Of a DNA stretch of 64,000 nt, positions 12,510 to 59,697 are shown in pieces (position 1 is the stretch's first letter; each line of letters opens with the position of its first letter). The translations under genes and the position numbers were made by a program. A model generated the notes under the pieces. The model worked only from the letters and a program-made list of their open reading frames with translations, searched no databases and had not been told where the DNA came from. Location of the stretch: positions 1-64,000 of IMG/VR virus record IMGVR_UViG_3300035181_000357, one strand, 5' to 3'.

Positions 12510-12525
12510 AACTTCCGGAACAAAA

Positions 12526-12605
12526 GAGAAGAGAAGAGAAGAGAAGAGAAGAGAAGAGAAGAGAAGAGAAGAGAAGAGAAGAGAAGAGAAGAGAAGAGAA
12601 GAGAA
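12526..12605. repeat. Perfect (GAGAA)16 pentanucleotide tandem repeat, intergenic
   Basis: 16 units counted directly, between the dCMP deaminase stop and the SbcD start. Confidence 0.95.
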
Positions 12606-12615
12606 GAAATCTTGA

Positions 12616-20286: not shown

Positions 20287-21030
20287 CTATTTGTAGTTTG
20301 TAATACGGAGCCACACTGGGTCATCAAAATCAACGAGGTCCCGATTGACTTCTGATACCGATGATCCAAGCTCCAAGACAGTTTCTTGTCTGGTATTAGT
20401 TTTCTGTTCCTTGCGTAAGGCTCTAGTAGAAGATTCTGTAATCCTTATTGGCTTAGTCCCTAGTAGTTTTCTGAACTCACTGGTCATTGATTTCAGATCG
20501 GCTCTATTATTCAATTCAGCTAAGTTGTGGGTACAGAACCATGTCTGCTTACCTAGACTCTTCCTCGTTTTGATAACATACTCATGTTGTTTTCCAGCCG
20601 CTTCATAGAATGGAAAAGCCGAGGCTATAATGATGAGGAGATCGGTACGATATAGCTCTCGTCTCTGCTCATCCTCTTTAGAAAAGGATCTAGACATAAT
20701 CTCATCAGGAGTCATTACCTTCCAAGTCTTAGTCCAGATCTTTCTATGTAGTAAAGCGGTCTTTAAATGTGCATACAAATTCGGAGCGTTCTCAAACTCG
20801 ATAGTTATATCTTTATTTTTCTCCAACGGTTCTAGAAGAGGTGTTGACTTCAGTGATCCATATCTCTTTAACTCACCGAGGTACTTCAAGATCATCTCTT
20901 TGATAACACACTGACAAGGACTATAACTCCCGTCTTCATTTGCTAACGATCTAGATCCACGACATTTTGGACATACCTTTGCAGCTAAAAGAAATACATT
21001 TTCAATGTCTCTCTGGCTACTCGTCGTCAT
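20287..21030 (-). CDS. DnaC/IstB-like helicase loader, degenerate
   Basis: N-terminal CPKC...CQC Zn motif, then a ..DLLII..., R....K.TWFCT/N pattern of DnaC-like AAA+. No intact Walker A. Confidence 0.5.
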   Translation of the reverse strand: MTTSSQRDIENVFLLAAKVCPKCRGSRSLANEDGSYSPCQCVIKEMILKYLGELKRYGSLKSTPLLEPLEKNKDITIEFENAPNLYAHLKTALLHRKIWTKTWKVMTPDEIMSRSFSKEDEQRRELYRTDLLIIIASAFPFYEAAGKQHEYVIKTRKSLGKQTWFCTHNLAELNNRADLKSMTSEFRKLLGTKPIRITESSTRALRKEQKTNTRQETVLELGSSVSEVNRDLVDFDDPVWLRITNYK

Positions 21031-23041
21031 CTAATACCCCACCACCTAGACTTGATACCTTTTGTTGTAAGGCTGAGTATGAATCCGTGTTCCACAGTTC
21101 TTTCTCTTCCACACGCTTCTTGGGTTTCTTAGTCTCGAGAATTGTCTTTCTGACACCAATTTTATTCATAGTCAAATTGGTACCATCAATAAAGTTCTTT
21201 AATTTCAGCGTCTTCACATGAGCCTTCAACATATCTTCGAAATCGTTCTCATCATCAATCTTATCCATACCAGATGTCATATCGAGAAGTTCTGTACCAT
21301 CATCTAGTACACCAGCCGAATATGTCTCACCGAGGATGACTTCAAAGACGCCTTTCTTAGACCTCAGAGTCTCAATGACATACTCATCAATAGTACCTTT
21401 AGCCATTAAGATATGGAGAGTACAAGCGGAATGTGGACTGGCCATACGTAACATTCTTCCTACGAGCTGAAGCATATCTCCCCATGACCAAGGACAATCT
21501 AAGACGATCATGTGAGCAGCTTGTTGAAGATTGATACCTTCTATACCAGCTGCATTGATGAAGATGAGATCATGTTCATCAGACTCCTGGAATAGTCTAC
21601 GATTTATTTCTCTCTTCTTCTCATTCTCAGCACCAGTAATTCTAAGGAAATTTCTATCTGTGAAATGCCCTTCTTTACTGAGCCACTCTAATCTATCGAT
21701 CCAGGATCTGTACTTCGTGAATACAATGACTTTCTGTCCAGATAACTCACCATCAAGCAGATCTAGTAATTCTTCCTCTTTGGACGACAGAGCCTTATTA
21801 TGGAATATCTTTGGATCATCCCTATCTAGTAACGCACTCGAATTCGCTACTAACTGGAAGACAGACATAGCTGTCATCATGTTGTCGATGCTTCTGTCCT
21901 TGACCTCTACTACTTCCCCAGCTACTTTCTTTATACTCGGTGGTAGAACATAGTCGCCATTCGGAATATCCTTTAGGAGCAACTTATATTCTTTGTCACT
22001 GAGATCAAAGGGATGGAATATTGTTGCTAACTTGGGTAGCTTTTCTTTAACTTGTGCCTGGGATCTTCCATAGTAGAATGGACGGATAGCCATCTTGAAA
22101 TCACGGACATTTTTATATCCAACGATGTCCCACTTATATCTGCCTCTACCAATGTGTTTCTTTTTCTGAACACAGAAATTATATTTGAAACTGAACTCTG
22201 TTCCGAACGGACGAATACCAACAGCCCAGGCAATGGAATAGAACTCATCTAGTTTGTTTTTCAATCCTGTGGCTGTCATAACGTGAACACGATGAGCATG
22301 TTTCTGGATATTTTCTACCAACGTTCTAATACTGGTCCCAGCAGATTTAAACTTCTGTCCTTCGTCTAGAATCAGATAGATATGCTCACCATGTGGTGCC
22401 ATCAACTCACATAGTTTTAGGATCTCTTGACTAATTACTTCTTTCTTGTCATCTGGAGCAGGATCGCCATTATCATCAAACTCGCCCTCGATCCTCTTTC
22501 GTTTCCCAATGAGAGATGTGTACTTAGCAATCAACACATCTTTCTTCTTACCATTGAGGAAATGTTCTACCTGTTTTAATCTCGCTTCATTACTCTTTAA
22601 ATCTCTGTATTTATCCTTCATTACCCAGACATTTAAGTCAGAAAATTTCTCGAACTCTGAAGCCCACTGGTACACAGTAGATCTCGTAGTTAGAACTATG
22701 ACCTTAAGATTCTCTACTCTGTCGTAGTGGTAACACGAACTGGCAATGGCACAAATCGTCTTACCTAACCCTACTGCATCTCCAATGATGAGCCTAGGTA
22801 GGATCGCCATATGAGCTATCATCATCGTCTGGTAGTTTCTTGGAGGAATCTGTCCGTATTTGGATCCCATCTTTATGGGGATTGGACCAGATTCAGGATC
22901 ATGCTTTCTGATCCTCTCCAATTTTTCCAGATCTTTATCGGCTATACCCTTATACTGGGTATACCAAGTTACTAGGCCACAGTTTGGATTTGGTACAAAC
23001 CGTTCCTTGAGCTCTCTTATACTGACTTTCTTTTCTGCCAT
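21017..23041 (-). CDS. SNF2-family superfamily 2 helicase
   Basis: GDAVGLGKT, ILDE, MTATGLKN, KVIVFT, GIEGINLQ, QLVGRMLR. Confidence 0.9.
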   Translation of the reverse strand: MAEKKVSIRELKERFVPNPNCGLVTWYTQYKGIADKDLEKLERIRKHDPESGPIPIKMGSKYGQIPPRNYQTMMIAHMAILPRLIIGDAVGLGKTICAIASSCYHYDRVENLKVIVLTTRSTVYQWASEFEKFSDLNVWVMKDKYRDLKSNEARLKQVEHFLNGKKKDVLIAKYTSLIGKRKRIEGEFDDNGDPAPDDKKEVISQEILKLCELMAPHGEHIYLILDEGQKFKSAGTSIRTLVENIQKHAHRVHVMTATGLKNKLDEFYSIAWAVGIRPFGTEFSFKYNFCVQKKKHIGRGRYKWDIVGYKNVRDFKMAIRPFYYGRSQAQVKEKLPKLATIFHPFDLSDKEYKLLLKDIPNGDYVLPPSIKKVAGEVVEVKDRSIDNMMTAMSVFQLVANSSALLDRDDPKIFHNKALSSKEEELLDLLDGELSGQKVIVFTKYRSWIDRLEWLSKEGHFTDRNFLRITGAENEKKREINRRLFQESDEHDLIFINAAGIEGINLQQAAHMIVLDCPWSWGDMLQLVGRMLRMASPHSACTLHILMAKGTIDEYVIETLRSKKGVFEVILGETYSAGVLDDGTELLDMTSGMDKIDDENDFEDMLKAHVKTLKLKNFIDGTNLTMNKIGVRKTILETKKPKKRVEEKELWNTDSYSALQQKVSSLGGGVLDDDE

Positions 23042-24051: not shown

Positions 24052-24942
24052 CTAAGTGAACTCAAGTTCCTTTTTATTTATCCAATATTCATATGGGTCT
24101 TTGAACTTATCTTTCAACATCCATACCCTATGACCATCAGCTTTAAGTCTATTACTGTATTCAGCCCCTACTTCGTCAGAATCTAATATAAATACTAATT
24201 TCAGACCCTCGAGTTGCTTCCAGTGCATGTCAGAAATGAATGCACTACCCAATCCAACCGATTGCATCCCAAGCTGATCACAAGCTACATGATCAAAGAA
24301 CCCTTCTACTACGTAGACAGTCTTGTTGGGATCTATTTTATGAAGACCGAACGTAGCCGATCTACCATGAGAGAATAGCCACTTTGCCCAGAACTTGCTG
24401 ACATGTTCATCCACATATCTGAATACCAGGTTATTTAGATTCCCTTGTCTATCGTAACTAGGCATAACTATCTGCTCTTGAACTAACATATCGGTGGGTT
24501 CACCTAATTGTTCTAACTTGTAGCTAGCGTATTCTAGCTCTTCTTTATAGAATGGGAAATATCTAGATAACGATTTATAATCATGATCTCGGTATCGCCA
24601 TGAACTCATTTGGTATTCATGGATCAGGTCCATTGGAAATGACCTAGCCTTTAGATAGTCCGAGCATATTTCTGACATAGGTTGGCTCAAGATATCGTTA
24701 ACTTCATCTATACATAAATCTGGATGTCTAGGGACATAGTCAGGATACCCGAATTTCGTAGCTATAGACTTGGCATAATCTCTGTTTACGGTATGATGAT
24801 CTAACGCTGCTTTCATCTCACCATGAGGAACTAGTAACTTGGCTAGTTCAATACCCTCTTCTGGTACGAAGTACTCCAGAAATGGTAGAGGATCAATAAC
24901 CAATTTATACCGTAACTTTTTCTTAGGTCCAGGATTCAACAT
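24052..24942 (-). CDS. DnaG-type primase catalytic (TOPRIM) protein 1, no Zn finger
   Basis: VYVVEGFFD...G....V...G.A, ILDSDEVG, KDP.E. Confidence 0.75.
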   Translation of the reverse strand: MLNPGPKKKLRYKLVIDPLPFLEYFVPEEGIELAKLLVPHGEMKAALDHHTVNRDYAKSIATKFGYPDYVPRHPDLCIDEVNDILSQPMSEICSDYLKARSFPMDLIHEYQMSSWRYRDHDYKSLSRYFPFYKEELEYASYKLEQLGEPTDMLVQEQIVMPSYDRQGNLNNLVFRYVDEHVSKFWAKWLFSHGRSATFGLHKIDPNKTVYVVEGFFDHVACDQLGMQSVGLGSAFISDMHWKQLEGLKLVFILDSDEVGAEYSNRLKADGHRVWMLKDKFKDPYEYWINKKELEFT

Positions 24943-24956
24943 ACGTCGTTAATACC

Positions 24957-24990
24957 TATAAAAATAGGCTCCGAAGAGCCTATTTTTATA
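24957..24990. terminator. Bidirectional intrinsic terminator, UUCG loop
   Basis: TATAAAAATAGGCTC-CGAA-GAGCCTATTTTTATA, 15-bp perfect inverted repeat. Confidence 0.85.
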
Positions 24991-26267: not shown

Positions 26268-27116
26268 TCACGGTTTTATATCGAACTTATACCCAAGACC
26301 AATAACTGAAGTCGTGCCTATGAATCCAGCAGTTAACTCCATTTTATTATTAACTCTGTAGCCACCGAGAATTCCAGCTGTCCATTTCTTGGTATCAAAA
26401 TTGTAACCAGCTACTGGTGATACTGTAAATCTAGGCAACGCTTTATCAAGGCCAAACGCACTCGGTGTGAACATATTTTTAGCAGATTCTAATGGGATCT
26501 CTTCTTTACCGATCAGCACGTTATTCTCATCATAGACTTCTCTAGACATTTTAGCAGCTGATCTGTACCCACCGTCTTCTAACTTCCATTCACCAAAAGA
26601 GGTTGTAAACAGCTCTTTGTTGTTCTTCCATTTGGAACCAGTAAAGGCCAGACCTAGGGGTTTTGATGGATCATAATTGAGATTAAGACTAGTTAGTGCT
26701 GGGGCATTTGGTCGTTCTTGAACCAACTTCACATCTTTTACCACACCAGTTGCATCTCGAGATCCACCAATAATCTTGGTCAAATCCATCATATTTGCAT
26801 TAATCTTACCCACAGTAGTAAACAAACTCTGCAACTGCGCATTGTTTGCATTCATGTACTGAACCATTTGATTGCCTAGAAGCTTAGTAGCTTCTGTTTG
26901 GGCTTCAGAATTCTTCTTCAGTATCTCATTGGTAGATTGATATGCCTCTCCAACTTTCTTGAAGTCAGATTGAAGAGTGGAAGTCATTGCTACTTGTCGC
27001 TTTAACTCATTCTTAGCATCGATATAATCGTTAATGAAGAAGGTGACAGCTAATACAGCTGCCACCCCTAATATGATCTTTATCTGTAGCGCATAAGCTT
27101 TGATTGTTTCTAGCAT
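26268..27116 (-). CDS. Membrane-anchored coiled-coil protein with C-terminal beta strands (spanin-like?)
   Basis: N-terminal TM helix IILGVAAVLAVTFFI, coiled coil, amphipathic beta C-terminus ending LGYKF. Confidence 0.45.
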   Translation of the reverse strand: MLETIKAYALQIKIILGVAAVLAVTFFINDYIDAKNELKRQVAMTSTLQSDFKKVGEAYQSTNEILKKNSEAQTEATKLLGNQMVQYMNANNAQLQSLFTTVGKINANMMDLTKIIGGSRDATGVVKDVKLVQERPNAPALTSLNLNYDPSKPLGLAFTGSKWKNNKELFTTSFGEWKLEDGGYRSAAKMSREVYDENNVLIGKEEIPLESAKNMFTPSAFGLDKALPRFTVSPVAGYNFDTKKWTAGILGGYRVNNKMELTAGFIGTTSVIGLGYKFDIKP

Positions 27117-27121: not shown

Positions 27122-28174
27122 CTACTTATTGATTAGCCTTGCGAAATTAAGAGCACCTCTTGCAGTAGCATCGAGGGGATACGTAGCGGAACGAGCTGTC
27201 CCGACACGGAAACGAACATTGAGATTCTTCATAAAGATGTCATTGAACATCTTATCGAAACCAGGAATTAAGCTAGTACCACCAGAATAAATAACTGGTA
27301 CCAGTTCCTTAATCTCAGTACGATTTGCTGGCATTGCAAAGAACTCATTTACAGCATCTACTAACTTAGTTAGAAGTTCCTTGTACATCAAGGAGATAGC
27401 TTCTGCCTGTCTCTCTGACTGGGCATCATGTGATGTATCAGGGTTGATAATTCTGCCAGTAACAACATCTACTCCATGTTCCTTCAACATTGTAATGTGA
27501 GAGGAAAGAGAGTTAGTGGCCTTGGCTGCACCATCATCGATGAAATCACCACCGAAAGGAATGCTGAACATTCTAACAGGTAGAGATTTGTACGTGCATG
27601 CTACGTTAATCATACCAGCACCAAGAGATACACTAAGTGCGGTTAATGGTAGTTCATCCGCGTTCTTTGGAGACATAGTCTCACTGTAGGTTACAGCTAC
27701 GGCCTCGTTAATTGCTCTAGCCTTGAAACCTAATCCGTTGATGAGTTCCTGGAAAAATCTGCTGTGAAAGTTTAGATCGTTCGACTGAATGACTCCGTTC
27801 TCAAAAATTGGACCCGGAATAGAGAAAGCAGCTACTTCTCCTGTTCCTTTGCCTAAGATCTTCTCAAGAATCAGAGATACTACAGCCTTACCATCCTCTT
27901 CCTTAGAACTTATGAAACCCTTAGATAGTGGGCGACGCAGTTCACCACCGAGAGCCCCAGCAAGCTCAACAGCATCTGCACCTACTACATAAAGGTTCTC
28001 TGCACCTTGTACGAAAGAGATTCCGGACATCTCGAGCATAGGTGCTTGCTCCAACGGAAGTGATAAGAAGCAATCTCGTACGCTGCTAATCTCTACCTTT
28101 GCGTCAGTGCTTTGTACTGCGGCCACCATGAACGCAGTTCCAACGTCAACGCCTTGGGGATTTACTTTAGACAT
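27122..28174 (-). CDS. Actin-like ATPase (MreB/ParM/FtsA superfamily), probable start MSKVNPQ
   Basis: Phosphate-1 GVDVGT, connect-1 NEAVAV, phosphate-2 SLGAGMINV, GGDFID, adenosine YSGGTSLIPGF, connect-2 ARG. Confidence 0.85.
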   Translation of the reverse strand: MSKVNPQGVDVGTAFMVAAVQSTDAKVEISSVRDCFLSLPLEQAPMLEMSGISFVQGAENLYVVGADAVELAGALGGELRRPLSKGFISSKEEDGKAVVSLILEKILGKGTGEVAAFSIPGPIFENGVIQSNDLNFHSRFFQELINGLGFKARAINEAVAVTYSETMSPKNADELPLTALSVSLGAGMINVACTYKSLPVRMFSIPFGGDFIDDGAAKATNSLSSHITMLKEHGVDVVTGRIINPDTSHDAQSERQAEAISLMYKELLTKLVDAVNEFFAMPANRTEIKELVPVIYSGGTSLIPGFDKMFNDIFMKNLNVRFRVGTARSATYPLDATARGALNFARLINK

Positions 28175-29276
28175 TCTTTCTCCTTTTAACTTGGATGTCT
28201 TTTCTAGATTTCTTACTACGCCCATCATTACATACTTCTTCTGAAGTTACTGATAGCCAAGGAGCCATCTTAGACAGCTCTTTTATAGAGATTTTATAAG
28301 AATTCCCGTACTTGGTAATGACGTCTTTATATGACTTAATGTCCTTATCTTGCCCATACATAGTCTTAGTAATGTGATATTTAAGGACGCACCAGGCAAT
28401 GACTAGATTCTTAGGTCGTTTGATCTTATCTTCTTTGATAGCTTCAAACAACTTGGCAGCGATCGCTCTCACATCTTTCTCACCAGCGAAGATCATGTTC
28501 TTGACGAAGGCAGTAATCATCTGCTGATTTGTTCTCTTTACCTTAGGTTTGATCTTCTTATCCACATGCTCGAGATCTTTGACAGCATCTTGGAATTCAT
28601 AGTCATCAACAGTCTTAATCTTAATATTTATCACTCGTTCTCCTACCAGATCTTCTATCAACAGAGATTTCAACTCTGGACCATCCTCTAAGATAGGTGA
28701 GTAATAGAATACCCTTAGATCTTTGGGAATAGTGTCTAAATTCAATAAATTCTTAAGTGGGGTCTGAACCATCATTGATGTTGTCTTGAGATCGACTTGT
28801 ACCACAGCTCTAGTTGCTGCTATGCTCTTTACTATACCACAGAAGTCTCGAGTATGACCATCTAAGATTCTGACAAAGGAGCCAGGTACTATCCCGATGT
28901 TCCTATGATCATACGTTTCCTTACATTTAGTAACAAGTCCTTGGATATAACTATCTTCTATGTTTATGAGACGATTTGGATGGGTTCCCTCACCATGGCA
29001 TACCAACCATACTACACCTGTCACAGATCGCAATTTCACAATCTTCTTAGGATCTAGGGAACGGACGAATATATAGCAATCCGTCATGAGTTCGAAGGAT
29101 TCAAGATTCCTATCAGAGACGGGAATAAAGATTTCTGCTGGGTCTTCTCTGAAGATGTTCTTGAGACTTTTCCCAATTCTCTTTATAGTCTCTTCACTAG
29201 TCTTTTCAGAACGAAGCTCAATAACATTCCATATTTTGCCAGTTAATTTAGAGGTATCACCGTATGTTAATATCAT
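28167..29276 (-). CDS. NusG-family transcription factor (NGN + KOW) with C-terminal extension
   Basis: WNVIEL...EIFIP......YIFV.....VTGV NGN domain; PGSFVRILDG..RDFCG.V KOW motif; ~190 extra C-terminal residues. Confidence 0.8.
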   Translation of the reverse strand: MILTYGDTSKLTGKIWNVIELRSEKTSEETIKRIGKSLKNIFREDPAEIFIPVSDRNLESFELMTDCYIFVRSLDPKKIVKLRSVTGVVWLVCHGEGTHPNRLINIEDSYIQGLVTKCKETYDHRNIGIVPGSFVRILDGHTRDFCGIVKSIAATRAVVQVDLKTTSMMVQTPLKNLLNLDTIPKDLRVFYYSPILEDGPELKSLLIEDLVGERVINIKIKTVDDYEFQDAVKDLEHVDKKIKPKVKRTNQQMITAFVKNMIFAGEKDVRAIAAKLFEAIKEDKIKRPKNLVIAWCVLKYHITKTMYGQDKDIKSYKDVITKYGNSYKISIKELSKMAPWLSVTSEEVCNDGRSKKSRKDIQVKRRKNV

Positions 29277-30190
29277 ATATCTCCCAATACTTTAATTCTA
29301 CCCTTAAACATCTGCATGATATCAGAGTTATCTTCGGGTTCGACATTTTTCTGAGGTGAATCCTCTAGCACTACCTGCTTGACCTGAGCCTTTATCTTGG
29401 TCACACATTTAGACAACTCATACAAGAACAGAGGTAGAATATCGACAGATGTCTGGACATTCCACTTTAGGAATAATGTGGTAACTTTCTCAGTTTCAGG
29501 AAAAGAACTCCTGATGGCTTCCCTGATCCTAGTTTCTTCTTTGGATATATACTCATCTTTGTCGAAGAAGCATTTTCCATAGTATGAGAACATATAGTTG
29601 ATAACTGTTTTATCTTCTTGTTCTTCACAGATAGCCATAGCCTCTTCTAGATTTCCGGTAGCCACAGCAGTGAAAGTTTTATATGCGATCTCATCTTCGT
29701 TGTTTTCCAGATTATCGTTCACTGATTCCCTGGATATCTTTCCTATCTTAGACAGAGTAGCTATGAAATTCTTAGCTTGTCTAATATTCCCTCTCGACTT
29801 CCTTACTACGCGATTCAAACCCTCTACAGTAAATCCAATGTTATTCTTAGAACAGAGAGCCATCAAGTACCCAACCATGTCTTTTTGATTTACCTTATTA
29901 AGATGAATCCTACAAGCTCTGGATCTGGTTGTTTCAGGTAATTTATCGTAATCCTGAACTTCCATAAAAGTCGTATGATGCTCAGAACTCAGTTCATTGG
30001 AGATAGTATAGGATATATTTTCTTTATCCAGTACTGAAGCTAGGTAGTTTATTATACTAGTTTTACCAGTACCTGGAGGTCCATCAAGGATTACCAATCT
30101 CGGGAATCTCTTTATATCAGTAAGTAGACCTCTGATGAGTTTCAGAGGTCTATCTTGCCCGATTATCTGGTCTAGACTTAGTAGTTCCAT
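29273..30190 (-). CDS. DnaX/clamp-loader-like AAA+ ATPase
   Basis: LDQIIGQD, GPPGTGKTS, SRA (SRC-like), SRGNIRQA sensor-2. Confidence 0.8.
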   Translation of the reverse strand: MELLSLDQIIGQDRPLKLIRGLLTDIKRFPRLVILDGPPGTGKTSIINYLASVLDKENISYTISNELSSEHHTTFMEVQDYDKLPETTRSRACRIHLNKVNQKDMVGYLMALCSKNNIGFTVEGLNRVVRKSRGNIRQAKNFIATLSKIGKISRESVNDNLENNEDEIAYKTFTAVATGNLEEAMAICEEQEDKTVINYMFSYYGKCFFDKDEYISKEETRIREAIRSSFPETEKVTTLFLKWNVQTSVDILPLFLYELSKCVTKIKAQVKQVVLEDSPQKNVEPEDNSDIMQMFKGRIKVLGDI

Positions 30191-31459
30191 TTACTCTTCT
30201 GATTCCGTTAAGAACGATACAGGCTTCATACCAGTAGTGGTATCATCGGCTTCGATCTCTAGTACACGCTTGATCAGTGATACATATAGATCTTCGAAGA
30301 TCGATAGACAATTTAGGTAAGCTAATGTATACTCACTGTAAGAGTGGCTATCTTCAGAATGACTATCGATAAAATTCTTGGTCAATTCAACATTCTTCAG
30401 AACCTGAGTCAAGCTAGTGCAGATATTAACATTGACTTTCCAAGACTTTGGACCATCTTCGATACCAACTGAGACATCAGAAGCCAAGACATTCCAAGAT
30501 TCGATCTCAGACAGAATCTCCCAACAACTAATGTTATCGGTTGCACCTACAGATGCCTTCAACTTCTCATCACAGATGACAGAAGGGGTCTGTAGGTCAA
30601 CGACATAACTGTCGTCTGAATACTGGCAGTACGTCTTTTTCTTCTTATATAGAAGACCGATTAATGGATAACGCTCCTGTAACTCAGCAAACTTGACATC
30701 GTCAAGATATGAACCCACGAGTTCATCCATCTCTGTGTTGATGATGTTCCCAGCTAGAATCTTCTTGAAGAAGTCGTATTGCCATGGTGTCCCATTAGGT
30801 CCAAAATACAGTGTAGTAGCTTTGAGTTCAATATCGAAAGACGACTTAAAGAAATCATTAAGATACATCAGTGACTTATCGTCCGTCATATCTGTGTAGA
30901 TTCTTCCAGTCTCGAAATCAACGAGCACCACGTTCTGCTTTCTATCAGAAGTAATCTCCTTGTCTAACATATCTTTAACTTCATTCTTGTCATCAGAATA
31001 GAGAAGACGGAAAGGCATATGATACATGTTAGCAGCGATCTGTTCCTTCTGTGATTCCTGATCCTCAAGGTCGATACGTTTACGCTTTACAAACCAGAAA
31101 GCAGCGGCAGTATCGGATAGCATCATAGACTCTAAACCGCCATAGCAAGGACTGAAATCTACCTCGTCACCACCAACATCCAATACTGAATTTCCAACGA
31201 CTCTGTCAACAAGGGCATAGAAGATATCTTCGGCATCCTTGTTTGTTGGGTTGATTGGGTTGATAACATCTAATCTTGCCTGACTGATGGGATTGATCCC
31301 GACCGTCATTTCATTGGCTTCATCCCAAAGTCGCACATTAGCTGCAGCAGCTGAGATACCTAGCCAATCATTAAAATTCTTAAACTTCTCTAAATCGTCT
31401 TCCTTCGTATCTTGAGCTAACTCTAGTCTAGCCCATGAAGATTTCCCGTATAAAGACAT
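30191..31459 (-). CDS. Hypothetical protein, possibly RdgC-like
   Basis: Central DKNEVKD.L...VVLVDFETGRIY......L.DFFKSSF resembles the RdgC core by eye; weak. Confidence 0.35.
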   Translation of the reverse strand: MSLYGKSSWARLELAQDTKEDDLEKFKNFNDWLGISAAAANVRLWDEANEMTVGINPISQARLDVINPINPTNKDAEDIFYALVDRVVGNSVLDVGGDEVDFSPCYGGLESMMLSDTAAAFWFVKRKRIDLEDQESQKEQIAANMYHMPFRLLYSDDKNEVKDMLDKEITSDRKQNVVLVDFETGRIYTDMTDDKSLMYLNDFFKSSFDIELKATTLYFGPNGTPWQYDFFKKILAGNIINTEMDELVGSYLDDVKFAELQERYPLIGLLYKKKKTYCQYSDDSYVVDLQTPSVICDEKLKASVGATDNISCWEILSEIESWNVLASDVSVGIEDGPKSWKVNVNICTSLTQVLKNVELTKNFIDSHSEDSHSYSEYTLAYLNCLSIFEDLYVSLIKRVLEIEADDTTTGMKPVSFLTESEE

Positions 31460-31460: not shown

Positions 31461-32258
31461 TTACTCCTCTTCCTCTAAAATGGTTATGTTTGTAGCCATC
31501 ACTGACTCGTTCTTATCTATAATACGTCTTAAAGTGTCCCTAAGTATCAATGCGTGTTTCCTATTCTCTAAGGCAAGGCTGGCGTCCTTCCCAGGTGTCT
31601 TCACTATCTCCACAGTCATAGACTTGAAGGTTCTGGCTACGATCGTCATGGCTTCAATACCGACAGGATCCTGGTCGAACATGAGATATAGGGTCTTGAC
31701 TCCAAGCATCTGGAGATAGGCTTCCTGTTTTCTACCGATCTTCTTTGTTAGCGAGCAGAGAACTGGAATATCTGCATTTAGTGCTCTAACAGCTACGAAA
31801 TCGAAAGTACCTTCCACGACTAAAACATATCCTAGTTTCTGGATCCTGGCGAGCATCTCATTACTGTTCCCAAGCCAACTTGGTCCTAGAAAATTATCTC
31901 TATCCCCTGCGATCCAATATTTTGCACCATCTTCACCTAGAGGTTTTGTCTGTGCCTTCATTGCTACATCGTTAAGATCATATTGTGGGAATACGAATCT
32001 TGGACCAGGTTCAAATCCCTTTGGTACATACATAATAGTATGATCTGATACACATTTGGTCAAGTTAGGTTTGATCAAGTCCTCAACCTGTCCCCAATTA
32101 CGTTCTTTAATGATCTTTATGACACTTGCTTGTACCCAACCAGACTTACCCTTCTCTTCTAACCTCTTGTACAAGCCCTTGACTTTCCTGATCAAGAACT
32201 CTACATCATCCCACCACTTTTTACTCATTCTTCCCCATCCAACATTCCTAATACCCAC
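31461..32258 (-). CDS. TOPRIM primase-like protein 2
   Basis: VLVVEGTFDFVAV, LYLMFDQDPVG, PGKDAS. Confidence 0.7.
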   Translation of the reverse strand: MGIRNVGWGRMSKKWWDDVEFLIRKVKGLYKRLEEKGKSGWVQASVIKIIKERNWGQVEDLIKPNLTKCVSDHTIMYVPKGFEPGPRFVFPQYDLNDVAMKAQTKPLGEDGAKYWIAGDRDNFLGPSWLGNSNEMLARIQKLGYVLVVEGTFDFVAVRALNADIPVLCSLTKKIGRKQEAYLQMLGVKTLYLMFDQDPVGIEAMTIVARTFKSMTVEIVKTPGKDASLALENRKHALILRDTLRRIIDKNESVMATNITILEEEE

Positions 32259-41612: not shown

Positions 41613-43868
41613 TTAAACGCCTTCACCGCTACCTTCTAATCCAACTTCATCAGAATCTTTTTCTTCTAATCGTAAGCCCTTTGCAATCTTGGATTTCAGA
41701 TCAGTAGTATCGAGGAGCTGCTCATTAACACCTCCACCATAAATTGAGTCGAGAAGTTGATTAAACTTAGAGTCGTTGACTGTGAACAAATCCTCTTCCA
41801 GCTTTCTTCTGCAGGTCTCAGGATCAATGTTTAAGAATTCGTAGATAATCTCGATTGGTACAGCACCCTTTGAATAGAGGTTGAACAGCATCTCATATAC
41901 GTCACCAGAATCTCTTAAAGCTAATCTGGAGAAGTTGATCTTAGGATAGATCCAACGAGGTCTGTTGTAATTATCTAGTTCGAAGAATCCCTTCTTCATA
42001 GCGATCGGTTTGAAGAAATCCTTCTCCATCAGATTGGAGATCGTCTCTCTATATAAGACATATGTGGTATTTAAGAGTTCTAAATGAATTCTGTTACCAG
42101 AATAGAATCCTTCACCAGTAAGGAGATCAGGACTGAACCCCAAACCAGTGGATAAGTCGGCATTTGTATGAGTCCACTCAGAGTCTAGTGCTAGAATACG
42201 ACCCTCAGATCCGATCTCATTCCATGTTGCATCGTAGTTAACGACGATTGTGTAATCTGGATCAGATTTAGCCTCGTCAATATGGGCTCGAAGGGCCATA
42301 GTCTCAGTGCTGGATATATCTGGGGCTACCACCAGTGTCTTTGGTGTCATATTTCTACTGACAATGGTTGTCTGAACCTGCCTGAGCTTGTCACGATATA
42401 TTACAGTACGAAGACAACGCTGTAGAATTGAACGTCCATGGTCTTCATATGGAGCTTTCTTTCTAGCGAAATGGATTAAGAAGCTACCCTTTAAAGGATC
42501 TTGATTGAGTGGGATCTTCCCATCTGTTTCCAAGACATCTCTAGTATCTTTATCGATATTAGGATCCTTCATGAATGCTTCCTTCTGGAATTCAGAAGGT
42601 TCATAGAACACGACAGGACCATCACCGAATCTAGCATCTCTTCTGATCTCAACTCTATCAGGTGGGATCATCTGAATTCTGGACCAGCCGCTGTAATCTT
42701 TGTTTACAATGTGGGAAAACAGCTCGTACTCGTGTTCTCTAGCTTCTCGGATTACCTTTAACTCAGATAATAGTTCCTTTTTCTTCTCCAAGAGAACGAG
42801 GAGCTTCTGAAGATCAGCAATTTCTTCTTTATCATCACTTAATTCATCGTCGTCTTCTGGTGTTGGAGAAAGATCTGGATCCTCAGAATCAGGACTGGTC
42901 TGTTGTTGGAGGTTATCTCCTACACCTTGTTCCTGCTCCTGATCTTTCTCTTGCTGAATCTCTAATGGAGATCTCATCTCCTTAGCTGCATCAGCATTAC
43001 TATCTTCTTTGTCTGCCTCGTCACCAGGAAGAGCGATTTTCATCGCAGCTACCTTTGATTTTACTTTAGCGATCTTTGTCTTGAGCTTTAGATGTGCACT
43101 TCTTATCTGTTTTAGGAGATTACTCTCTGTTTCAGTAGAAAGGCCTAGTTTCTTAGCTTCACGTATCCTTGAAGACTTAGCTGGATTGATGAACTGAATG
43201 ATGTCCATGTCATCAATACCATTAGCAGGATGCATATCTCCTTCACCAGAAGATTGATCTCGATCTCCACCCTCTCCACGACCACCTCTAGCTTTGATCT
43301 GCTTAGCAGCCTCTTCGCAGAGTGGCACATCTTCTTCTGAATCTTCTACGTACAAGAAGGCCTCTCCAATCAACCAGTATTCTTTAGTTGCTTGAAGCAA
43401 AGAATCGAATAACTCGGTATCTGATACGAGAGCCTGATAGAAATCATAAATGTAATCGGTGAATGCCTCAGAACTAGATTTTGGCTTCTCCAAAATCATC
43501 TTAGACATAGGCAATTCAGTATGAAGATCGATTGCTCGGGATACGATAGGATCTCTATCATATGAGAGTCTGTAGAACTTTAATTCTTCTTTTCTAGATT
43601 GAGGTAATTCCAGGGAATCTACTGGAAATTCAAAATTATAGTATCCAATATTCTGTGAATCAGCGATGTCAGCAGAACCCAAACCACCATCACCAAAGAG
43701 AATAGCCTGTTTACGAATGCCACCAGTCTTGGAGACTCCTAAAGCTATCGATCCATCTTCATTTTGATAAGTATATGAACCTGCAGAAAATGGTTCAGGT
43801 TTCTTATTTCGAGAAGTTGGTCTAGCAGCAGTTTTTCTCTTCACAGGTTGTTTCTTTGGATCTGCCAT
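41613..43868 (-). CDS. Portal protein with large acidic/coiled insertion
   Basis: DPIVSRAIDLHTELP, EYWLIGEAF, GRSILQRC; helical content and position near terminase and head genes. Confidence 0.72.
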   Translation of the reverse strand: MADPKKQPVKRKTAARPTSRNKKPEPFSAGSYTYQNEDGSIALGVSKTGGIRKQAILFGDGGLGSADIADSQNIGYYNFEFPVDSLELPQSRKEELKFYRLSYDRDPIVSRAIDLHTELPMSKMILEKPKSSSEAFTDYIYDFYQALVSDTELFDSLLQATKEYWLIGEAFLYVEDSEEDVPLCEEAAKQIKARGGRGEGGDRDQSSGEGDMHPANGIDDMDIIQFINPAKSSRIREAKKLGLSTETESNLLKQIRSAHLKLKTKIAKVKSKVAAMKIALPGDEADKEDSNADAAKEMRSPLEIQQEKDQEQEQGVGDNLQQQTSPDSEDPDLSPTPEDDDELSDDKEEIADLQKLLVLLEKKKELLSELKVIREAREHEYELFSHIVNKDYSGWSRIQMIPPDRVEIRRDARFGDGPVVFYEPSEFQKEAFMKDPNIDKDTRDVLETDGKIPLNQDPLKGSFLIHFARKKAPYEDHGRSILQRCLRTVIYRDKLRQVQTTIVSRNMTPKTLVVAPDISSTETMALRAHIDEAKSDPDYTIVVNYDATWNEIGSEGRILALDSEWTHTNADLSTGLGFSPDLLTGEGFYSGNRIHLELLNTTYVLYRETISNLMEKDFFKPIAMKKGFFELDNYNRPRWIYPKINFSRLALRDSGDVYEMLFNLYSKGAVPIEIIYEFLNIDPETCRRKLEEDLFTVNDSKFNQLLDSIYGGGVNEQLLDTTDLKSKIAKGLRLEEKDSDEVGLEGSGEGV

Positions 43869-43921
43869 ATAAATACCTCTATCATAATAGGAAATGACAG
43901 TCTATTAATGTAATGCTGTGA

Positions 43922-44260
43922 TTACTTGACTTCTTTTTCCAGATCAGCTTCTAAAGTAGCTAATTCCCTGATACTCTTCTCGTAATCTGCATCAAGCTTT
44001 GACATCTGCTGTCTGGCTCGAAGGTCCAGATCTAACATTTGTTTGAATAGAGGATCTAGTTCCTGAGGATGTGGTCTCTTAGAAAGAGCTTGAAGCATAG
44101 AAGTTCTATCAGCGATACTCCTCTTAAGATGGACTAGGCCAGATCGTAATGGTATTAAAGCACTTACAATCTGCTGAACTTCCTGGTATCTGGCTACCTT
44201 CTTTTTGAGTTCTCTAGTCTTCTTTTCAGCTTCTCTCTTTAACGCAGCTTCTGTTTTCAT
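43922..44260 (-). CDS. Coiled-coil hypothetical protein
   Basis: 112 aa, heptad-rich. Confidence 0.55.
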   Translation of the reverse strand: MKTEAALKREAEKKTRELKKKVARYQEVQQIVSALIPLRSGLVHLKRSIADRTSMLQALSKRPHPQELDPLFKQMLDLDLRARQQMSKLDADYEKSIRELATLEADLEKEVK

Positions 44261-47200
44261 TTCTTCCTTTTCTTAAACTCATCAGGAATATCTTTCTTAA
44301 AAACCTTATCGATAGCACTTCTCTTACCTTTGTAACCGAACACTACCTTTGAGTTTCCGATCCCCAGATACTTAATAAGTTCTTCGAAATCCTCTGGTCT
44401 TAGATCATCTCGAAGAAATGGAAACCCATCCTCATGATATTCATATTCAACAGGTTCTTCATCTTCTCTTCTTGGGATATGTGCTGGCTCTGCTACTTCT
44501 ATCTCCTCTTCCACCTCATCTGTCTCTACTACGAGTTTCATAACAGGTTTGATGATCGTAACATTAGGATTGCTAAGAGTTCCTAGGCGACCACCTGCTG
44601 GTAACTCTGGTCTATTCTTTGGATCTAATCCCATTCTCTCTTCATATTCAGCTATGGTTTCTAATTTTGAGTCATCTAGTTCCTGGTCTATACCCCAGAA
44701 CTCATCTAGTTGATAACATACGATCAATTTAATCCTGAGGGTTTTAACATCCTTATCCAGGTAGGATTTTAGCACCTGCTGGGCAGATTGGGTACGAGGA
44801 TGTAGGTTCTTCTCTAGATAAGATAAAGCCTTATCCCTCTTGTCCGGATCTTGTAGAGCCTCAAAAATCTTATTAAAGGATTTAGTCCCACCTGGTATAT
44901 ATTCTTCCAGGCCAGAAATTGCTGTCCAGGCCATTGGTTCATGTCCATCATCACCCGTCAGATGTTCTGTGACGTCCCAAGAACGACCATATTCTGTATC
45001 ACACTCAATAGGAACGATCCATTTCATCTTCTCGTGAAGATCACGAAGTCTCATCAACCTAGTCAACCTAGGAATGACGAATGGGACATATTCATTCTTT
45101 ACAGAATAGTCGATTTCATCGTGAACGCTACCGTGTAGCTCATAGACATTCTCTATACCTGGATCAGACTGGGACCAGTGTCGAATCCGATTCAAAGCCA
45201 TACGCATGAAATCACCAGCCAGACCCTGAAGAGGGATATTGATACTAACTCTCTGGATCTTACCGATAAACTTCTTGTAATCCTGCATATTTCTTACACC
45301 AGTAGATTTATCATAATACATGGTGTCTGCAGCTTTACGCAATCTGGCAATAGCACCTGGTGGAACATCTTCACCAGCCTTTTCTTGAGATTCTAGTTCT
45401 TTCAGAGAATTCTTTATCTCCCACCAACGGCGATAGTTCCTAGCATGCTCAGCATTTGGGTAATAAATCTTCTGAGCAGCCATTGCGGATTCAAATTTAA
45501 TGATTCTACCCGTTGCTGTCTTGCAGATCATACTCTCTTTAGCAATCTTCTGCTTATGATATACCCATTCTGCAAACTGTGGGACACCTTCCCAATACTT
45601 ATCAACCATGACTTTACACTCGTCGAAAGTAATTTCTTTGATTACCTTCTTCATCGACTCAAAGATGGTGTAGGCCGTACCACCATACAAAAGAGCGAAG
45701 TTCAAGATCTTGGCGAGCGATCTTAAGAATTTCTTTCTATCCTTTGGTGTCTTAGGATCAGAGAATTCAGGGAATACAGCTCTTGCTGTTAACGAGTGGA
45801 AGTCACCCTCACCTTCAAGGAATTCCTTAACGAAATTATCTTCTTTAGAGATATTAGCAGCCACACGCATTTCAATGTTGGAATAGTCTGTCGTAAAGAA
45901 TGTCCATCCAATCTTAGCAATGAACAAACTTCTAATATTCAGAATTTCTTCTGAATCGACCTTTTCAGACGTCGTATCTGGACCCTGAATGAACTCACAT
46001 GATGTACAAGATGGTACTAGACAGAACAAATCACCAAAGTATTCACCATAATGATTCCCTTTGATCCCTTTAGCTAGTTTCAAGGTCCCATCATCTTCTT
46101 TATTATAACAGGAAGGATGGAGGTCTTTTATATCATATTGGGCTTCTGGAACTGAGTTGATTCGTCGTCCCTGAACCCACTTATTACCTTCCACTCTCTT
46201 AATGGCTTGGATGTTAAGACCGAACCCTCCATCTTTCTCAAACTCACCACCAGTAGCTGACAAACGACCACCAGCTACTACGCACTGTCGAAGGTAGATT
46301 CGTGCCGTATGATCAACAGGATCATATGATAGATTTCCAGGATGAAGAGCAGCATATTCACGATATTCCATCAATTTCTTCAAGAACAGGTCATCTGGAT
46401 GAATCTTTAGCAATTCTTCTAAAGTCTCTGCATCGGTGGATGGTACCTTTGTCTTTTCACTCACTCTGAAAGGTTTAAATCCTTTATGCTTGAACAGAAT
46501 CTTGACTAACTGGATAGGAGAAGATGGATTAAAGACATCCCCGTCTTCACCTTCAATCTTCTTCCATTCTGCAATCTCTTCTAGCTCTTTCTTCAGAACT
46601 TCTAGTTTCCCGCCATGCCACTTGATTGTCTTCTTAAGCTTCTTCACATCAACATGGAAACGCTGACGCTCAATCCAGGTGATTGTGTCAATCAACTCAT
46701 GATCAATCTTATGTGCTAATTTTAATTCTCTGGAACTGTCTCGAAGCTCATCCCATAGGAGCCAAGTGCAGATAGCGTCACCTGCTGCATACCAGAGAGC
46801 GATGTCAGTGGGTACCCAGTTAAATGGAGCATGCTGTGATCGTAACGTAGTTTTTCCAGTTTCTGAGTTATAATAATCTGCCTTGACACTAGTCAAGGTC
46901 TTTAACTCAATCTGATCCATATCCAATCTTGTCTTGGACTGGAACTTCAAACCATCTGCAGCATGTCCTTTATCTCCCATATCTGCCTTGGGATCATCTA
47001 AGTATGCATCTACTTGAACATCTTCAATATATGGGTATTCTCTAATCAGAATGTTCATTAGAAGTTTAAGGACTTCTTTGTCGTATTTAGCATTGTAGAA
47101 GATCAAGAGACACTTATCGAAGAGTTCCTGTAGGATCTGCCTACATTCCTCTCTGTCTATATTGTTCCCATCCTCGTGAGTAATTGGAACATAGATACCT

Positions 47201-58751: not shown

Positions 58752-58815
58752 CCTAACTCCTAAATCTACAGATATAAGTCATCATAATAGGTAAGAGAAG
58801 TTATTTACATGTCTG

Positions 58816-59562
58816 TTAATGGTTAGCTCTGGATACCATAATGTGATCGAAAGCTGGATCTTCTACGTCAATGTAGAAGGAACCTAGTAAATCAGGATCT
58901 TCTTTAAACAAGAAACTCATCTTTTCTAGTTTCCGTTTACTGTATCCCTGACCATTAGCACTCGCTTTGTCAATGAGGCCATATATCATTGCACCTAACG
59001 ACAGACTTAGTTCGTCATCCTTATCTAATAGAGCCTTTGAAACCTGCGATAGAACTCTTCGTACATCAGGTCTGTGTACATTGCTCTTCTTGGCTACAAT
59101 GTTAAAACTTCTATACTTTCTATAGTCTTCTATCAGAGTAGAAGTTTTTACACCTTTAAGCACATTCTCTAGTCCATTTGTAGACAGAACAGTACTAATT
59201 AGACCAGAATCAGGATTGGCCCCATATATAATTATGGCCCCAAGCTTCTTGATGGCCATACGAATCTTAAAGCTGCATATTGTTTGAGTGGATCTGTGTA
59301 TCTTTGCCAGGCACCATTGAGGCTTATTGATCATGTAATAACTTAGGAGTAATTCCTGGTCTTCAATCGAGATATTTCTTAAAATCTTTAGAAAATCTGG
59401 AAAATTCTCCTTTATATACATTGAGATATGTTCTTCAATCAAATCATTTTGAGTCTCTAACGAGACTGTTTGATCTTGAAACTTCTCATCACCACTCTCT
59501 TCGTATGCATCTACTGATCGTTTAGAGATTATTGCGTCGAAGTACGGGCTGATTTCGGGCAT
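58816..59562 (-). CDS. Sigma70 region-4-like / tandem HTH regulator
   Basis: LRNISIEDQELL..YY...KPQ..LAK.....Q.......RMAIKKL, plus a second HTH SFNIVAKKSNVHRPDVRR. Confidence 0.6.
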   Translation of the reverse strand: MPEISPYFDAIISKRSVDAYEESGDEKFQDQTVSLETQNDLIEEHISMYIKENFPDFLKILRNISIEDQELLLSYYMINKPQWCLAKIHRSTQTICSFKIRMAIKKLGAIIIYGANPDSGLISTVLSTNGLENVLKGVKTSTLIEDYRKYRSFNIVAKKSNVHRPDVRRVLSQVSKALLDKDDELSLSLGAMIYGLIDKASANGQGYSKRKLEKMSFLFKEDPDLLGSFYIDVEDPAFDHIMVSRANH

Positions 59563-59663
59563 ATAGTTAGTTCCTAACCTGGATAACTACTTTATTCATT
59601 CTAAAACTCCATGTACGCCAACGTTTACACGTTATCATTCACTTTAATTATTACCGATAAATA

Positions 59664-59697
59664 ATAAAAAGTCTCACATTTTAGTGAGACTTTTTAT
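59664..59697. terminator. Bidirectional intrinsic terminator
   Basis: ATAAAAAGTCTCAC-ATTTTA-GTGAGACTTTTTAT. Confidence 0.85.

What the first reader, a model, noticed from the sequence alone, without database searches (positions are those of the whole stretch)
28167..29276. Phage NusG paralogue with a ~190-aa C-terminal extension, coupled to the actin gene
Seen: NGN and KOW domains plus an extra basic helical domain; the reading frame overlaps the actin start; all 64 kb are co-oriented and punctuated by strong intrinsic terminators. Known: specialised NusG paralogues (RfaH, LoaP, UpxY, plasmid ActX) antiterminate long operons. Inference: a phage processive antitermination factor, or an inhibitor of host NusG/Rho coupling, with a novel specificity domain.
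Basis: partly seen in the sequence, partly recalled or inferred. Interest (0 to 1): 0.7.

Follow-up and report, generated by a model that had tools for sequence, protein, structure and literature searches.

The report
Jumbo-phage NusG-like factor with extra domain
[quoted passage not shown] In other phages its short relatives sit next to, or are fused with, a Q-like antiterminator protein, which points to an undescribed two-part device acting on host RNA polymerase.

Summary
Window 28167-29276 (-) encodes a 369-aa protein. Residues 13-120 form an NGN domain (Z 10.3, rmsd 2.2 A to E. coli NusG NGN). Residues 128-182 form a KOW barrel. About 189 further residues follow: a conserved R-V-F-Y-Y motif, an acidic disordered linker, a basic five-helix domain with no fold or sequence match, and a K/R-rich tail. 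A profile comparison with bacterial NusG gives 94% probability, but curated NusG and UpxY models score far below their cut-offs.

The family is essentially restricted to phages (207 clusters at 50% identity). Short forms of about 190 aa lack the extension.

The actin link holds only in a subclade (8 of 41 loci). The common neighbour is the clamp loader (30 of 41).

The main new result concerns a 248-aa ORF in the window (58816-59562). Its family hits Pfam Phage_antitermQ and sigma region 4. This Q-like gene abuts all 6 short-form NusG-like genes examined, is fused to the NusG-like core in six or more protein clusters, and is present in all 6 complete genomes checked.

The best reading is a phage elongation/antitermination factor for host RNA polymerase that works with the Q-like partner. 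RNA polymerase binding and antitermination are untested. I rate it a new variant of a known kind.

The parts
28167..29276 (-). NusG-like gene (369 aa plus stop), protein P0001
   Evidence: ORF and translation. Fold matches to NusG, RfaH and Spt5. hhalign 94.1% to bacterial NusG. 77 close and 207 more distant homologue clusters.
28902..29276 (-). NGN domain (residues 1-125). Includes a family-specific N-terminal strand and helix (1-13) and an invariant polar stretch, W16..E20..R22-S23..T26..E28..T30..R33..G35.
   Evidence: VIA Z 10.3, rmsd 2.2 A to E. coli NusG NGN, model residues 13-120. Invariant columns. pLDDT 92-97.
28737..28901 (-). KOW domain (residues 126-180) with motif G-S-F-V-R-I-L-D-G-x-x-R-D-x-C-G-x-V
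   Evidence: PDB profile hits to NusG KOW. rmsd 1.3 A to KOW/SH3-like barrels. Invariant S133, F134, R136, G140, R143, G147.
28542..28736 (-). Post-KOW conserved motif P..R-V-F-Y-Y (residues 184-192), followed by an acidic, partly disordered linker (to residue 245)
   Evidence: Nearly invariant P184, R188, V189, Y191. Short-form relatives end just after this motif. Linker pI median 4.2. pLDDT below 50 at 215-225 and 238-241.
28257..28541 (-). Basic five-helix C-terminal domain (residues 246-340) with invariant T255, K289 (in P-K-N) and K299
   Evidence: pLDDT 93-98. Family pI 8.8-10.7. No fold or sequence match. Occurs as a stand-alone ORF in P0155. A homologue carries an intein 5 residues after P-K-N.
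28167..28256 (-). Variable K/R-rich C-terminal tail (residues 341-369) and stop. Its last codons hold the ribosome-binding site and start of the next gene.
   Evidence: Tail comparison across the family. Sequence.
29273..30190 (-). Clamp-loader (DnaX/RFC-like AAA+) gene. Its stop overlaps the NusG-like start (ATGA).
   Evidence: phrog_5846 E 3.3e-18, TIGR02397 E 2.7e-19. Overlap. Detected upstream of the NusG-like gene in 30 of 41 related loci.
27122..28174 (-). Actin-like (Volactin/ParM-superfamily) gene, tightly packed after the NusG-like gene. Probable start ATG at 28174.
   Evidence: PF25216 Volactin E 2.3e-45. Ribosome-binding site and start. Present after the NusG-like gene in only 8 of 41 loci, and there also tightly packed.
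58816..59562 (-). Q-like / sigma-region-4-like protein (248 aa), inferred partner of the NusG-like protein. First gene after the terminator at 59657-59697.
   Evidence: 47% identical to L004 protein, which hits PF06530 at 27.4 bits (cut-off 26). 31 of 41 family members hit Phage_antitermQ and 18 of 41 hit Sigma70_r4_2. Fused or adjacent to NusG-like genes elsewhere. The window copy itself gives no Pfam hit.
24957..24990 (-). Intrinsic-terminator-like hairpin (stem ATAGGCTC, loop TTCG, with flanking A and T tracts). First strong intergenic terminator downstream of the NusG-like gene.
   Evidence: Sequence. Energy scan -11.5 kcal/mol, intergenic.
59657..59697 (-). Intrinsic-terminator-like hairpin immediately upstream of the Q-like gene
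   Evidence: Sequence. -17.7 kcal/mol, intergenic.

Best explanation
The gene encodes a phage-specific, highly diverged NusG paralogue that acts on the host's multisubunit RNA polymerase.

Inferred steps:
1. The NGN domain docks on the beta' clamp helices of elongating host polymerase, in place of host NusG.
2. This makes transcription of the long, co-oriented phage gene arrays more processive and less prone to termination.
3. It does so together with a Q-like, sigma-region-4-like DNA-binding protein, encoded in the window at 58816-59562.

In small phages the two genes abut, and in some phages they are one polypeptide. In this jumbo-phage clade the genes have separated. Here the NusG-like protein carries an acidic linker and a basic five-helix domain. 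These most likely hold nucleic acid (nascent RNA or nearby DNA) or dock the partner in trans.

Shown: the folds, the family, its restriction to phages, the domain architectures, the gene neighbourhoods and the fusions.
Inferred: polymerase binding, antitermination, and the role of the extra domain.
For: NGN plus KOW identity:
- Foldseek E 6e-8, with all top hits NusG, RfaH or Spt5.
- VIA Z 10.3 and rmsd 2.2 A for the NGN domain.
- hhalign 94.1%, E 1.2e-7.
- Weak but concordant model hits: UpxY 2.3e-5, nusG 0.008, phrog_6386 'transcription antiterminator' 0.008.

The target is probably host polymerase:
- No beta, beta' or T7-type polymerase was detected in the contig.
- No beta or beta' match was found in the complete relative Tunturi_5 (the T7-type search was run on the window's contig only and its control was silent), and Tunturi_5 does encode a sigma-70-type factor.

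Link to a Q-like partner:
- The Q-like family (31 of 41 members hit Phage_antitermQ) overlaps or abuts 6 of 6 short-form NusG-like genes examined.
- It lies 1-2.3 kb upstream in 4 long-form loci.
- It is fused N-terminally to the NusG-like core in P0197, P0212 and P0215-P0218.
- It is present in 5 of 5 relatives that are at least 90% complete, and in Tunturi_5.

Selection on the extra domain:
- pLDDT is above 93 and residues T255, K289 and K299 are invariant.
- The domain is uniformly basic across the family.
- A stand-alone version exists.
- An intein sits 5 residues after the P-K-N motif in one homologue.

Setting: about 110 kb of co-oriented genes, with few strong intergenic terminators.
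Against: - There is no direct evidence of polymerase binding or of any effect on termination.
- Sequence similarity to NusG is far below curated cut-offs: 16 vs 135.7 bits for nusG and 24 vs 100 for UpxY. Pfam's NGN model does not hit.
- The KOW hairpin that carries I-F-G-R in NusG (the Rho and S10 contact, from my own knowledge) is two residues longer and different here (alignment).
- In most jumbo relatives the gene sits inside a replication module, after the clamp loader, not at the head of a target operon as with UpxY or LoaP.
- No recruitment site was found, and the candidate promoter motif is not significant.
- The window's own Q-like copy gives no Pfam hit. Its assignment is by homology to copies that do.
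- The host is unknown, and no RNA data were listed.
Confidence: 0.55

Rival explanations
1. Host-takeover inhibitor. The protein occupies the NusG site on host polymerase, or sequesters Rho or S10 through its KOW and extra domain. The aim would be to derail host transcription and Rho-dependent silencing generally, rather than to equip phage-transcribing complexes specifically.
For: The same fold evidence applies. No recruitment element was found. The gene sits with early or replication-type genes.
Against: The conserved pairing and fusion with a DNA-binding Q-like protein suggests site-specific loading. The KOW tip that contacts Rho and S10 in NusG is not conserved.
Confidence: 0.15
2. A split, sigma-like initiation or activation device tied to replication. 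NGN would take the beta' clamp-helix site used by sigma region 2, and the Q-like protein would take the flap site used by sigma region 4. The C-terminal domain or the aromatic R-V-F-Y-Y motif would tether the complex to DNA or to a sliding clamp. This would resemble T4 gp55/gp33/gp45 late transcription.
For: The clamp-loader gene is directly upstream in 30 of 41 loci, with overlapping stop and start here. The partner has sigma-region-4-like segments. There is a conserved aromatic motif after KOW, and it is C-terminal in short forms. The NGN strand-1/helix-1 region is strongly conserved and polar; from my own recollection, this is where RfaH reads non-template DNA.
Against: No phage sliding clamp was detected with PF02768 or PF09116. 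The aromatic motif is modelled with fair confidence packed near the KOW domain, not as a free peptide. Short-form phages lack the clamp-loader context. NGN proteins are not known to initiate transcription.
Confidence: 0.1
3. A non-transcriptional role. The NGN-KOW scaffold has been recruited as a replisome, recombination or translation accessory, for example binding nucleic acid or a ribosomal protein. Its similarity to NusG would then be only structural heritage.
For: Membership in the replication module. Very low sequence similarity to NusG.
Against: The full two-domain NusG architecture is retained with conserved KOW motif residues. The repeated link to a Q-like/sigma-4-like transcription protein argues for transcription.
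Confidence: 0.08

Closest known systems
Housekeeping bacterial NusG (TIGR00922; e.g. E. coli NusG in PDB 6c6u)
   Same: Two-domain NGN plus KOW architecture. The NGN superposes at 2.2 A, Z 10.3. The KOW motif G-x-x-V-R-V/I-x-x-G...F-x-G-x-V is recognisable.
   Different: - Scores 16 bits against a cut-off of 135.7.
- Has an extra N-terminal strand and helix.
- The NGN insertion hairpin is shorter.
- The KOW tip hairpin differs.
- Carries a 189-aa C-terminal extension.
- Is phage-encoded, with only 2 hits in 185,579 species genomes, both on short MAG contigs.
Specialised NusG paralogues: RfaH/ActX, UpxY, LoaP, TaA
   Same: A second NusG-family protein encoded by horizontally moving or specialised DNA. 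It presumably replaces NusG on polymerase to favour long operons. The best curated-model hit is UpxY, E 2.3e-5. Like UpxY with UpxZ, it comes as a two-gene module with a partner.
   Different: - Below every subfamily cut-off.
- No alpha-hairpin KOW is predicted, unlike autoinhibited RfaH.
- The partner is Q-like/sigma-4-like, not UpxZ-like.
- It is not at the head of a polysaccharide, polyketide or pilus operon.
- It has an additional basic helical domain.
Lambdoid Q antiterminators (Pfam PF06530 Phage_antitermQ; PHROG 79)
   Same: The partner family matches the C-terminal half of the Q model (positions 55-113 of 118) in 31 of 41 members. In the window the gene directly follows a terminator.
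   Different: The matches are weak: best E 1.1e-6, and only some members pass the cut-off. The window copy does not hit at all. The proteins are about 245 aa with additional sigma-4-like segments. As far as I know, lambdoid Q proteins are not paired or fused with a NusG-like protein, and no such case turned up in the literature searches.
Tunturiibacter phage Tunturi_5 gp25 (PP885688.1; annotated 'transcription antiterminator')
   Same: Orthologue: 36% identity over 94% of the length, with the same synteny primase - gp23 - clamp loader - gp25. It comes from a cultured jumbo phage and host (PMC11924767).
   Different: There is no actin-like gene after it. It has not been studied experimentally, and the paper does not mention antitermination. 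Its Q-like partner gp346 is annotated 'exonuclease'.
Other phage NusG-like proteins in BFVD (e.g. F5B3X4; A0A6J5PZH6 'NusG transcription antiterminator')
   Same: Phage-encoded NGN-KOW proteins. Foldseek E 1.7e-8 to 1e-5.
   Different: They are 146-241 aa long and lack the C-terminal extension.
Thermotoga maritima NusG with extra domain DII; eukaryotic Spt5 with added KOW domains and C-terminal repeat region
   Same: These are precedents for NusG-family proteins that gained extra domains (PMC7819879).
   Different: DII is inserted within the NGN and is not helical or basic. Here the addition is a C-terminal helical domain with no detectable relative.

Membership tests
NusG/Spt5 superfamily | N-terminal NGN alpha/beta domain | tested here: met
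   VIA Z 10.3, rmsd 2.2 A, 96 of 98 residues of E. coli NusG NGN. Foldseek TM 0.78 to 6c6u_N. hhalign 94.1%.
NusG/Spt5 superfamily | KOW beta-barrel with the KOW glycine/hydrophobic motif following the NGN | tested here: met
   Profile hits to NusG KOW (1nz9, E 0.017). rmsd 1.3 A to KOW barrels. Invariant G132-S-F-V-R...G140...G147.
NusG/Spt5 superfamily | Binds the clamp coiled-coil (beta' clamp helices) of a multisubunit RNA polymerase | not testable with these tools
   Needs a binding assay or a structure. See Tried and rejected for the one modelling attempt, which gave no verdict.
Housekeeping NusG (TIGR00922 equivalog) | Score above the curated cut-off (135.7 bits) | tested here: not met
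   16.0 bits, E 0.0082. Pfam NusG NGN model not hit.
Housekeeping NusG (TIGR00922 equivalog) | KOW tip (I-F-G-R hairpin) used for Rho and S10 contacts (from my own knowledge) | tested here: not met
   The aligned hairpin is two residues longer and reads K-T-x-S-L/M-L/M-V instead (alignment).
UpxY (NF033644) | Score above the cut-off (100 bits), and position as first gene of a capsule operon with upxZ | tested here: not met
   24.4 bits. The context is a phage replication module.
RfaH/ActX | C-terminal domain folded as an alpha-hairpin masking the NGN in the free protein; ops-dependent recruitment | tested here: inconclusive
   AlphaFold2 predicts a beta-barrel KOW, but such models may not capture fold switching. 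No ops-like element was sought beyond a promoter-motif scan.
Lambdoid Q antiterminators (PF06530), for partner ORF 58816-59562 | Match to the Pfam model above the gathering score (26 bits) | tested here: inconclusive
   The window copy has no hit at E<=1. Its 47%-identical homologue scores 27.4 bits. 31 of 41 family members hit at E<=0.1, best 1.1e-6. Only model positions 55-113 are matched.
Lambdoid Q antiterminators (PF06530), for partner ORF 58816-59562 | Loads at a promoter-proximal DNA site and renders polymerase terminator-resistant | not testable with these tools
   Needs in vitro transcription or in vivo read-through assays.

The most novel reading that the evidence does not exclude
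The NusG-like protein and the Q-like protein together form a sigma-mimicking, two-point clamp on host RNA polymerase: NGN on the beta' clamp helices and the sigma-4-like module on the flap. The clamp would stay on during elongation. In the jumbo-phage clade it would be tethered, through the basic C-terminal domain or the aromatic post-KOW motif, to replicating DNA or a sliding clamp. That would couple phage late transcription to replication in a way analogous to, but unrelated by descent from, T4 gp55/gp33/gp45.
Probability: 0.1. Interest if true: 0.85.

Novelty: new variant of a known kind. Interest (0 to 1): 0.62.

Why it matters
NusG is the only transcription factor conserved in all cellular life. 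Its specialised paralogues are a main route by which foreign DNA escapes Rho-dependent silencing. Phage-encoded NusG paralogues are annotated in databases, but in the literature I could search they have not been studied.

This family has three notable features:
- It is widespread: 207 clusters at 50% identity, in jumbo and ordinary phages.
- It carries a domain with no detectable relative.
- It is linked to a Q-like protein by gene fusion and strict adjacency.

That linkage gives a concrete, testable hypothesis for a new two-component antitermination device. A cultured system exists in which to test it: Tunturi_5 gp25 and gp346 in Tunturiibacter psychrotolerans.

Tried and rejected
- **Complex prediction.** NGN-KOW (residues 1-180, with alignment) was modelled against E. 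coli beta' residues 250-320. The result was no verdict (score 0.23, mark 0.32). It counts neither for nor against binding.
- **Fold of the C-terminal domain.** Foldseek against PDB gave best E 0.84. AlphaFold DB clusters gave best E 0.72. VIA-align against all PDB clusters gave best Z 6.0 (eIF4G, cullin WHB, RecX, FF domains), which is below the noise level for helical domains. ESM Atlas by shape gave TM <= 0.34, and by features <= 0.75. The profile against PDB sequences gave no hit. Pfam on all 52 C-termini found nothing consistent; HMG_box appeared in 4 of 52, E 0.006.
- **Relation to the Q-like family.** hhalign gives 0.2% probability that the C-terminal domain is related to it.
- **Promoter and recruitment motif.** The CCTATTATGAT-type motif is not enriched by count. 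The two exact copies are both intergenic, which is suggestive only. The sigma-70 consensus scan found fewer sites than shuffles.
- **Phage sigma.** The Tunturi_5 sigma has no homologue in this 69%-complete contig.
- **Phage sliding clamp.** PF02768 and PF09116 gave nothing in this contig or in Tunturi_5. The unknown 422-aa gene between primase and clamp loader has no PDB sequence hit.
- **Expression data.** Four DNA runs (sediment and microbial mat) hold the sequence, but no RNA run was listed.
- **Locus search with short forms.** A locus search with the short-form alignment failed because no conserved stretch was available.
- **Tree of the N-terminal core.** Architectures cluster strongly (0 of 500 shuffles), but the backbone is unresolved. 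A single gain of the C-terminal domain cannot be claimed (quick tree, SH-aLRT only, midpoint root, fragments included).
Full report
**What is there**

The window is the first 64 kb of a 210,611-bp IMG/VR viral contig, estimated 69% complete. Near-identical DNA is found in sediment and microbial-mat metagenomes.

The ORF at 28167-29276 on the minus strand gives a 369-aa protein, P0001. Its start overlaps the stop of the upstream clamp-loader gene by ATGA. Its last codons contain the ribosome-binding site AAGGAG and the ATG at 28174 of the downstream gene, so the two frames share ATGTCTAA. That downstream gene is actin-like (Pfam Volactin, E 2.3e-45).

All sizeable ORFs from position 1 to about 110 kb lie on the minus strand. 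An energy-based scan finds five strong intergenic ones on the coding strand within the window. The tool's simple scan shows no excess of terminator-like sites in 20-36 kb.

**Is it NusG-like?**

Sequence models alone give weak but concordant hits:
- UpxY: E 2.3e-5, 24 bits against a cut-off of 100.
- nusG TIGR00922: E 0.008, 16 bits against 135.7.
- PHROG 6386 'transcription antiterminator': E 0.008.
- A Spt5 KOW model: E 0.03.
- T. maritima NusG in the PDB: E 0.027.

An AlphaFold2 model built on 52 homologues is confident, with mean pLDDT 86.9. Its best PDB matches are exclusively NusG, RfaH and Spt5 (Foldseek E 6e-8). In the second-look alignment, residues 13-120 superpose on the NGN of E. 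coli NusG bound to polymerase with Z 10.3 and rmsd 2.2 A over 96 of 98 residues. Residues 128-182 superpose on KOW barrels at 1.3 A.

I fetched 23 bona fide NusG genes from Desulfobacterota genomes. A profile-profile comparison with the phage family gives 94.1% probability, E 1.2e-7, across residues 14-161.

The protein is therefore a true but very distant NusG-family member. It fails the curated cut-offs of housekeeping NusG and of UpxY, so I do not file it under either.

**The extension**

After the KOW domain comes a nearly invariant P..R-V-F-Y-Y motif (residues 184-192). Next is an acidic, partly disordered linker (family median pI 4.2). Then comes a five-helix domain (residues 246-340, pLDDT 93-98) that is basic in every member (pI 8.8-10.7). 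Last is a variable, mostly K/R-rich tail.

The helical domain has no credible relative. Foldseek against PDB and AlphaFold DB, an exhaustive VIA-align pass, the ESM Atlas, Pfam on all 52 C-termini, and a profile search of PDB sequences all gave nothing above noise.

Two observations suggest it is an independent, selected module:
- It exists as a stand-alone ORF (P0155).
- In homologue P0079 a canonical intein is inserted five residues after the domain's invariant P-K-N motif. The intein has Cys1, a LAGLIDADG block, and His-Asn followed by Cys+1. By general knowledge, inteins favour conserved functional sites.

**The family**

A word-indexed search found 77 close clusters, all covering both halves of the protein. 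An exhaustive profile search found 207 clusters at 50% identity.

Among the 220 proteins collected:
- 96 have the core plus the C-terminal domain.
- 41 are short forms of about 190 aa that end just after the aromatic motif. P0149 is verified as a complete ORF.
- 13 have only the C-terminal domain.
- Several, of about 411-457 aa, carry an N-terminal extension.

Long forms sit on contigs of up to 463 kb. Short forms sit on ordinary phage contigs of 40-56 kb. Only two matches occur in one genome each of 185,579 prokaryote species, and both are on short MAG contigs. A quick tree shows that the architectures cluster but does not resolve how often the domain was gained or lost.

The one cultured relative is the jumbo phage Tunturi_5 of Tunturiibacter (Acidobacteriota). 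Its gp25 is annotated 'transcription antiterminator' but has not been studied.

**Neighbourhood**

I examined 41 related loci; some are near-duplicates. The clamp loader is detectable directly upstream in 30 of them, usually within a block ATPase - small ORF - primase - 422-aa unknown - clamp loader - NusG-like. The actin-like gene follows in only 8. In those the two genes are again tightly packed. Elsewhere, for example in Tunturi_5, the next gene is the homologue of window ORF 26268-27116. The actin coupling is therefore real here but belongs to a subclade.

**The partner**

The N-terminal extensions of the 411-457-aa forms are homologous to a 246-aa protein encoded two genes upstream of the NusG-like gene in a 338-kb contig. 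They are also homologous to window ORF 58816-59562 (47% identity to that 246-aa protein). The window ORF is the first gene after the strong terminator at 59657-59697.

This family has 111 clusters. It matches Pfam Phage_antitermQ in 31 of 41 members (best E 1.1e-6; one copy scores 27.4 bits against a cut-off of 26). It matches Sigma70_r4_2 in 18 of 41, and PHROG 79 'anti-termination protein Q-like' at E 1e-4. The window's own copy gives no direct hit.

Using a profile of the family, I found the following:
- A member overlaps or abuts the NusG-like gene in all six short-form contigs examined: L045, L074, L075, L077, L078 and L079.
- A member lies 1-2.3 kb upstream in four long-form loci that lack the clamp-loader context.
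- A member is in the same polypeptide in L076.
- All five relatives that are at least 90% complete, and Tunturi_5, encode one. In Tunturi_5 it is annotated 'exonuclease'.

Fusion plus strict adjacency is strong comparative evidence that the two proteins act together.

**Which polymerase?**

No beta, beta' or single-subunit polymerase was detected in the contig. For the single-subunit model the control genomes were also silent, so that result is weak. The complete Tunturi_5 genome likewise lacks beta and beta' matches but encodes a sigma-70-type factor. The likely target is therefore host polymerase.

**Mechanism**

By established knowledge of the family, an NGN domain binds the beta' clamp helices and bridges the cleft. 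This suppresses pausing and backtracking. Specialised paralogues exclude NusG, and with it Rho.

I infer that this protein does the same on phage-transcribing host polymerase, and that the Q-like/sigma-4-like partner provides DNA-site-specific loading or a second anchor. The basic C-terminal domain probably binds nucleic acid or docks the partner now that the genes are apart.

None of this is shown. A modelling attempt with E. coli beta' gave no verdict. The rivals are a general host-takeover inhibitor, a replication-coupled sigma-like device, and a non-transcriptional role. They are listed with their evidence.

**Novelty**

Literature searches found no study of phage NusG paralogues with extra domains, or of a Q-like/NusG-like pair. 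Databases already label such proteins NusG or antiterminator.

I rate it a new variant of a known kind. Interest is moderately high because the fusion and adjacency give a specific, testable hypothesis in a cultured phage-host pair.

Noticed in passing
Protein P0079 (homologue; also loci L037 3676-6111 and L038 4566-7001): A canonical intein of about 372 aa interrupts the C-terminal basic helical domain five residues after its invariant P-K-N motif. It starts with Cys, has a LAGLIDADG-type block, and ends His-Asn before a Cys. The L037 and L038 open frames of about 812 aa look the same but were not inspected.
   Followed up: partly
window 12524-12607: Perfect pentanucleotide tandem repeat, (AAGAG) x 16.8 on the plus strand and CTCTT on the coding strand. 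It lies in an intergenic gap between minus-strand genes.
   Followed up: no
window 27122-28174 (-): The actin-like gene is a strong match to the recently defined Volactin family (PF25216, E 2.3e-45), with weaker MamK, FtsA and salactin hits. Among relatives it occurs only in a subclade and looks inserted between the NusG-like gene and the homologue of ORF 26268-27116.
   Followed up: partly
L080 3254-3988 (Tunturi_5 gp346, PP885688.1 301753-302487): This gene is annotated 'exonuclease' in the deposited record. It is the Q-like/sigma-4-like family member (E 6e-102 to the family profile), so the annotation is probably wrong.
   Followed up: partly
window 58781-58791 and 43881-43891 (-): The only two exact copies of CCTATTATGAT in the 210-kb contig are both intergenic on the coding strand, about 30-40 nt before start codons. 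One is just downstream of the Q-like gene and one is before the portal gene. This may be a phage promoter element, but it is not significant by count.
   Followed up: partly
window 24052-24942 (-) and 31461-32258 (-): There are two separate Toprim/primase-like genes within 8 kb. Structural genes (portal 41613-43868, terminase 51136-52992, PKD-bearing fibre-like proteins) are interleaved with replication genes (DNA polymerase 44257-47589, helicase 21017-23041) on one strand.
   Followed up: no
window 30191-31459 (-): A conserved 422-aa gene lies between the primase and the clamp loader. Its Tunturi_5 homologue is annotated 'exonuclease recombination-associated protein'. It has no Pfam, PHROG or PDB sequence match. 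No sliding clamp was found in this phage.
   Followed up: partly
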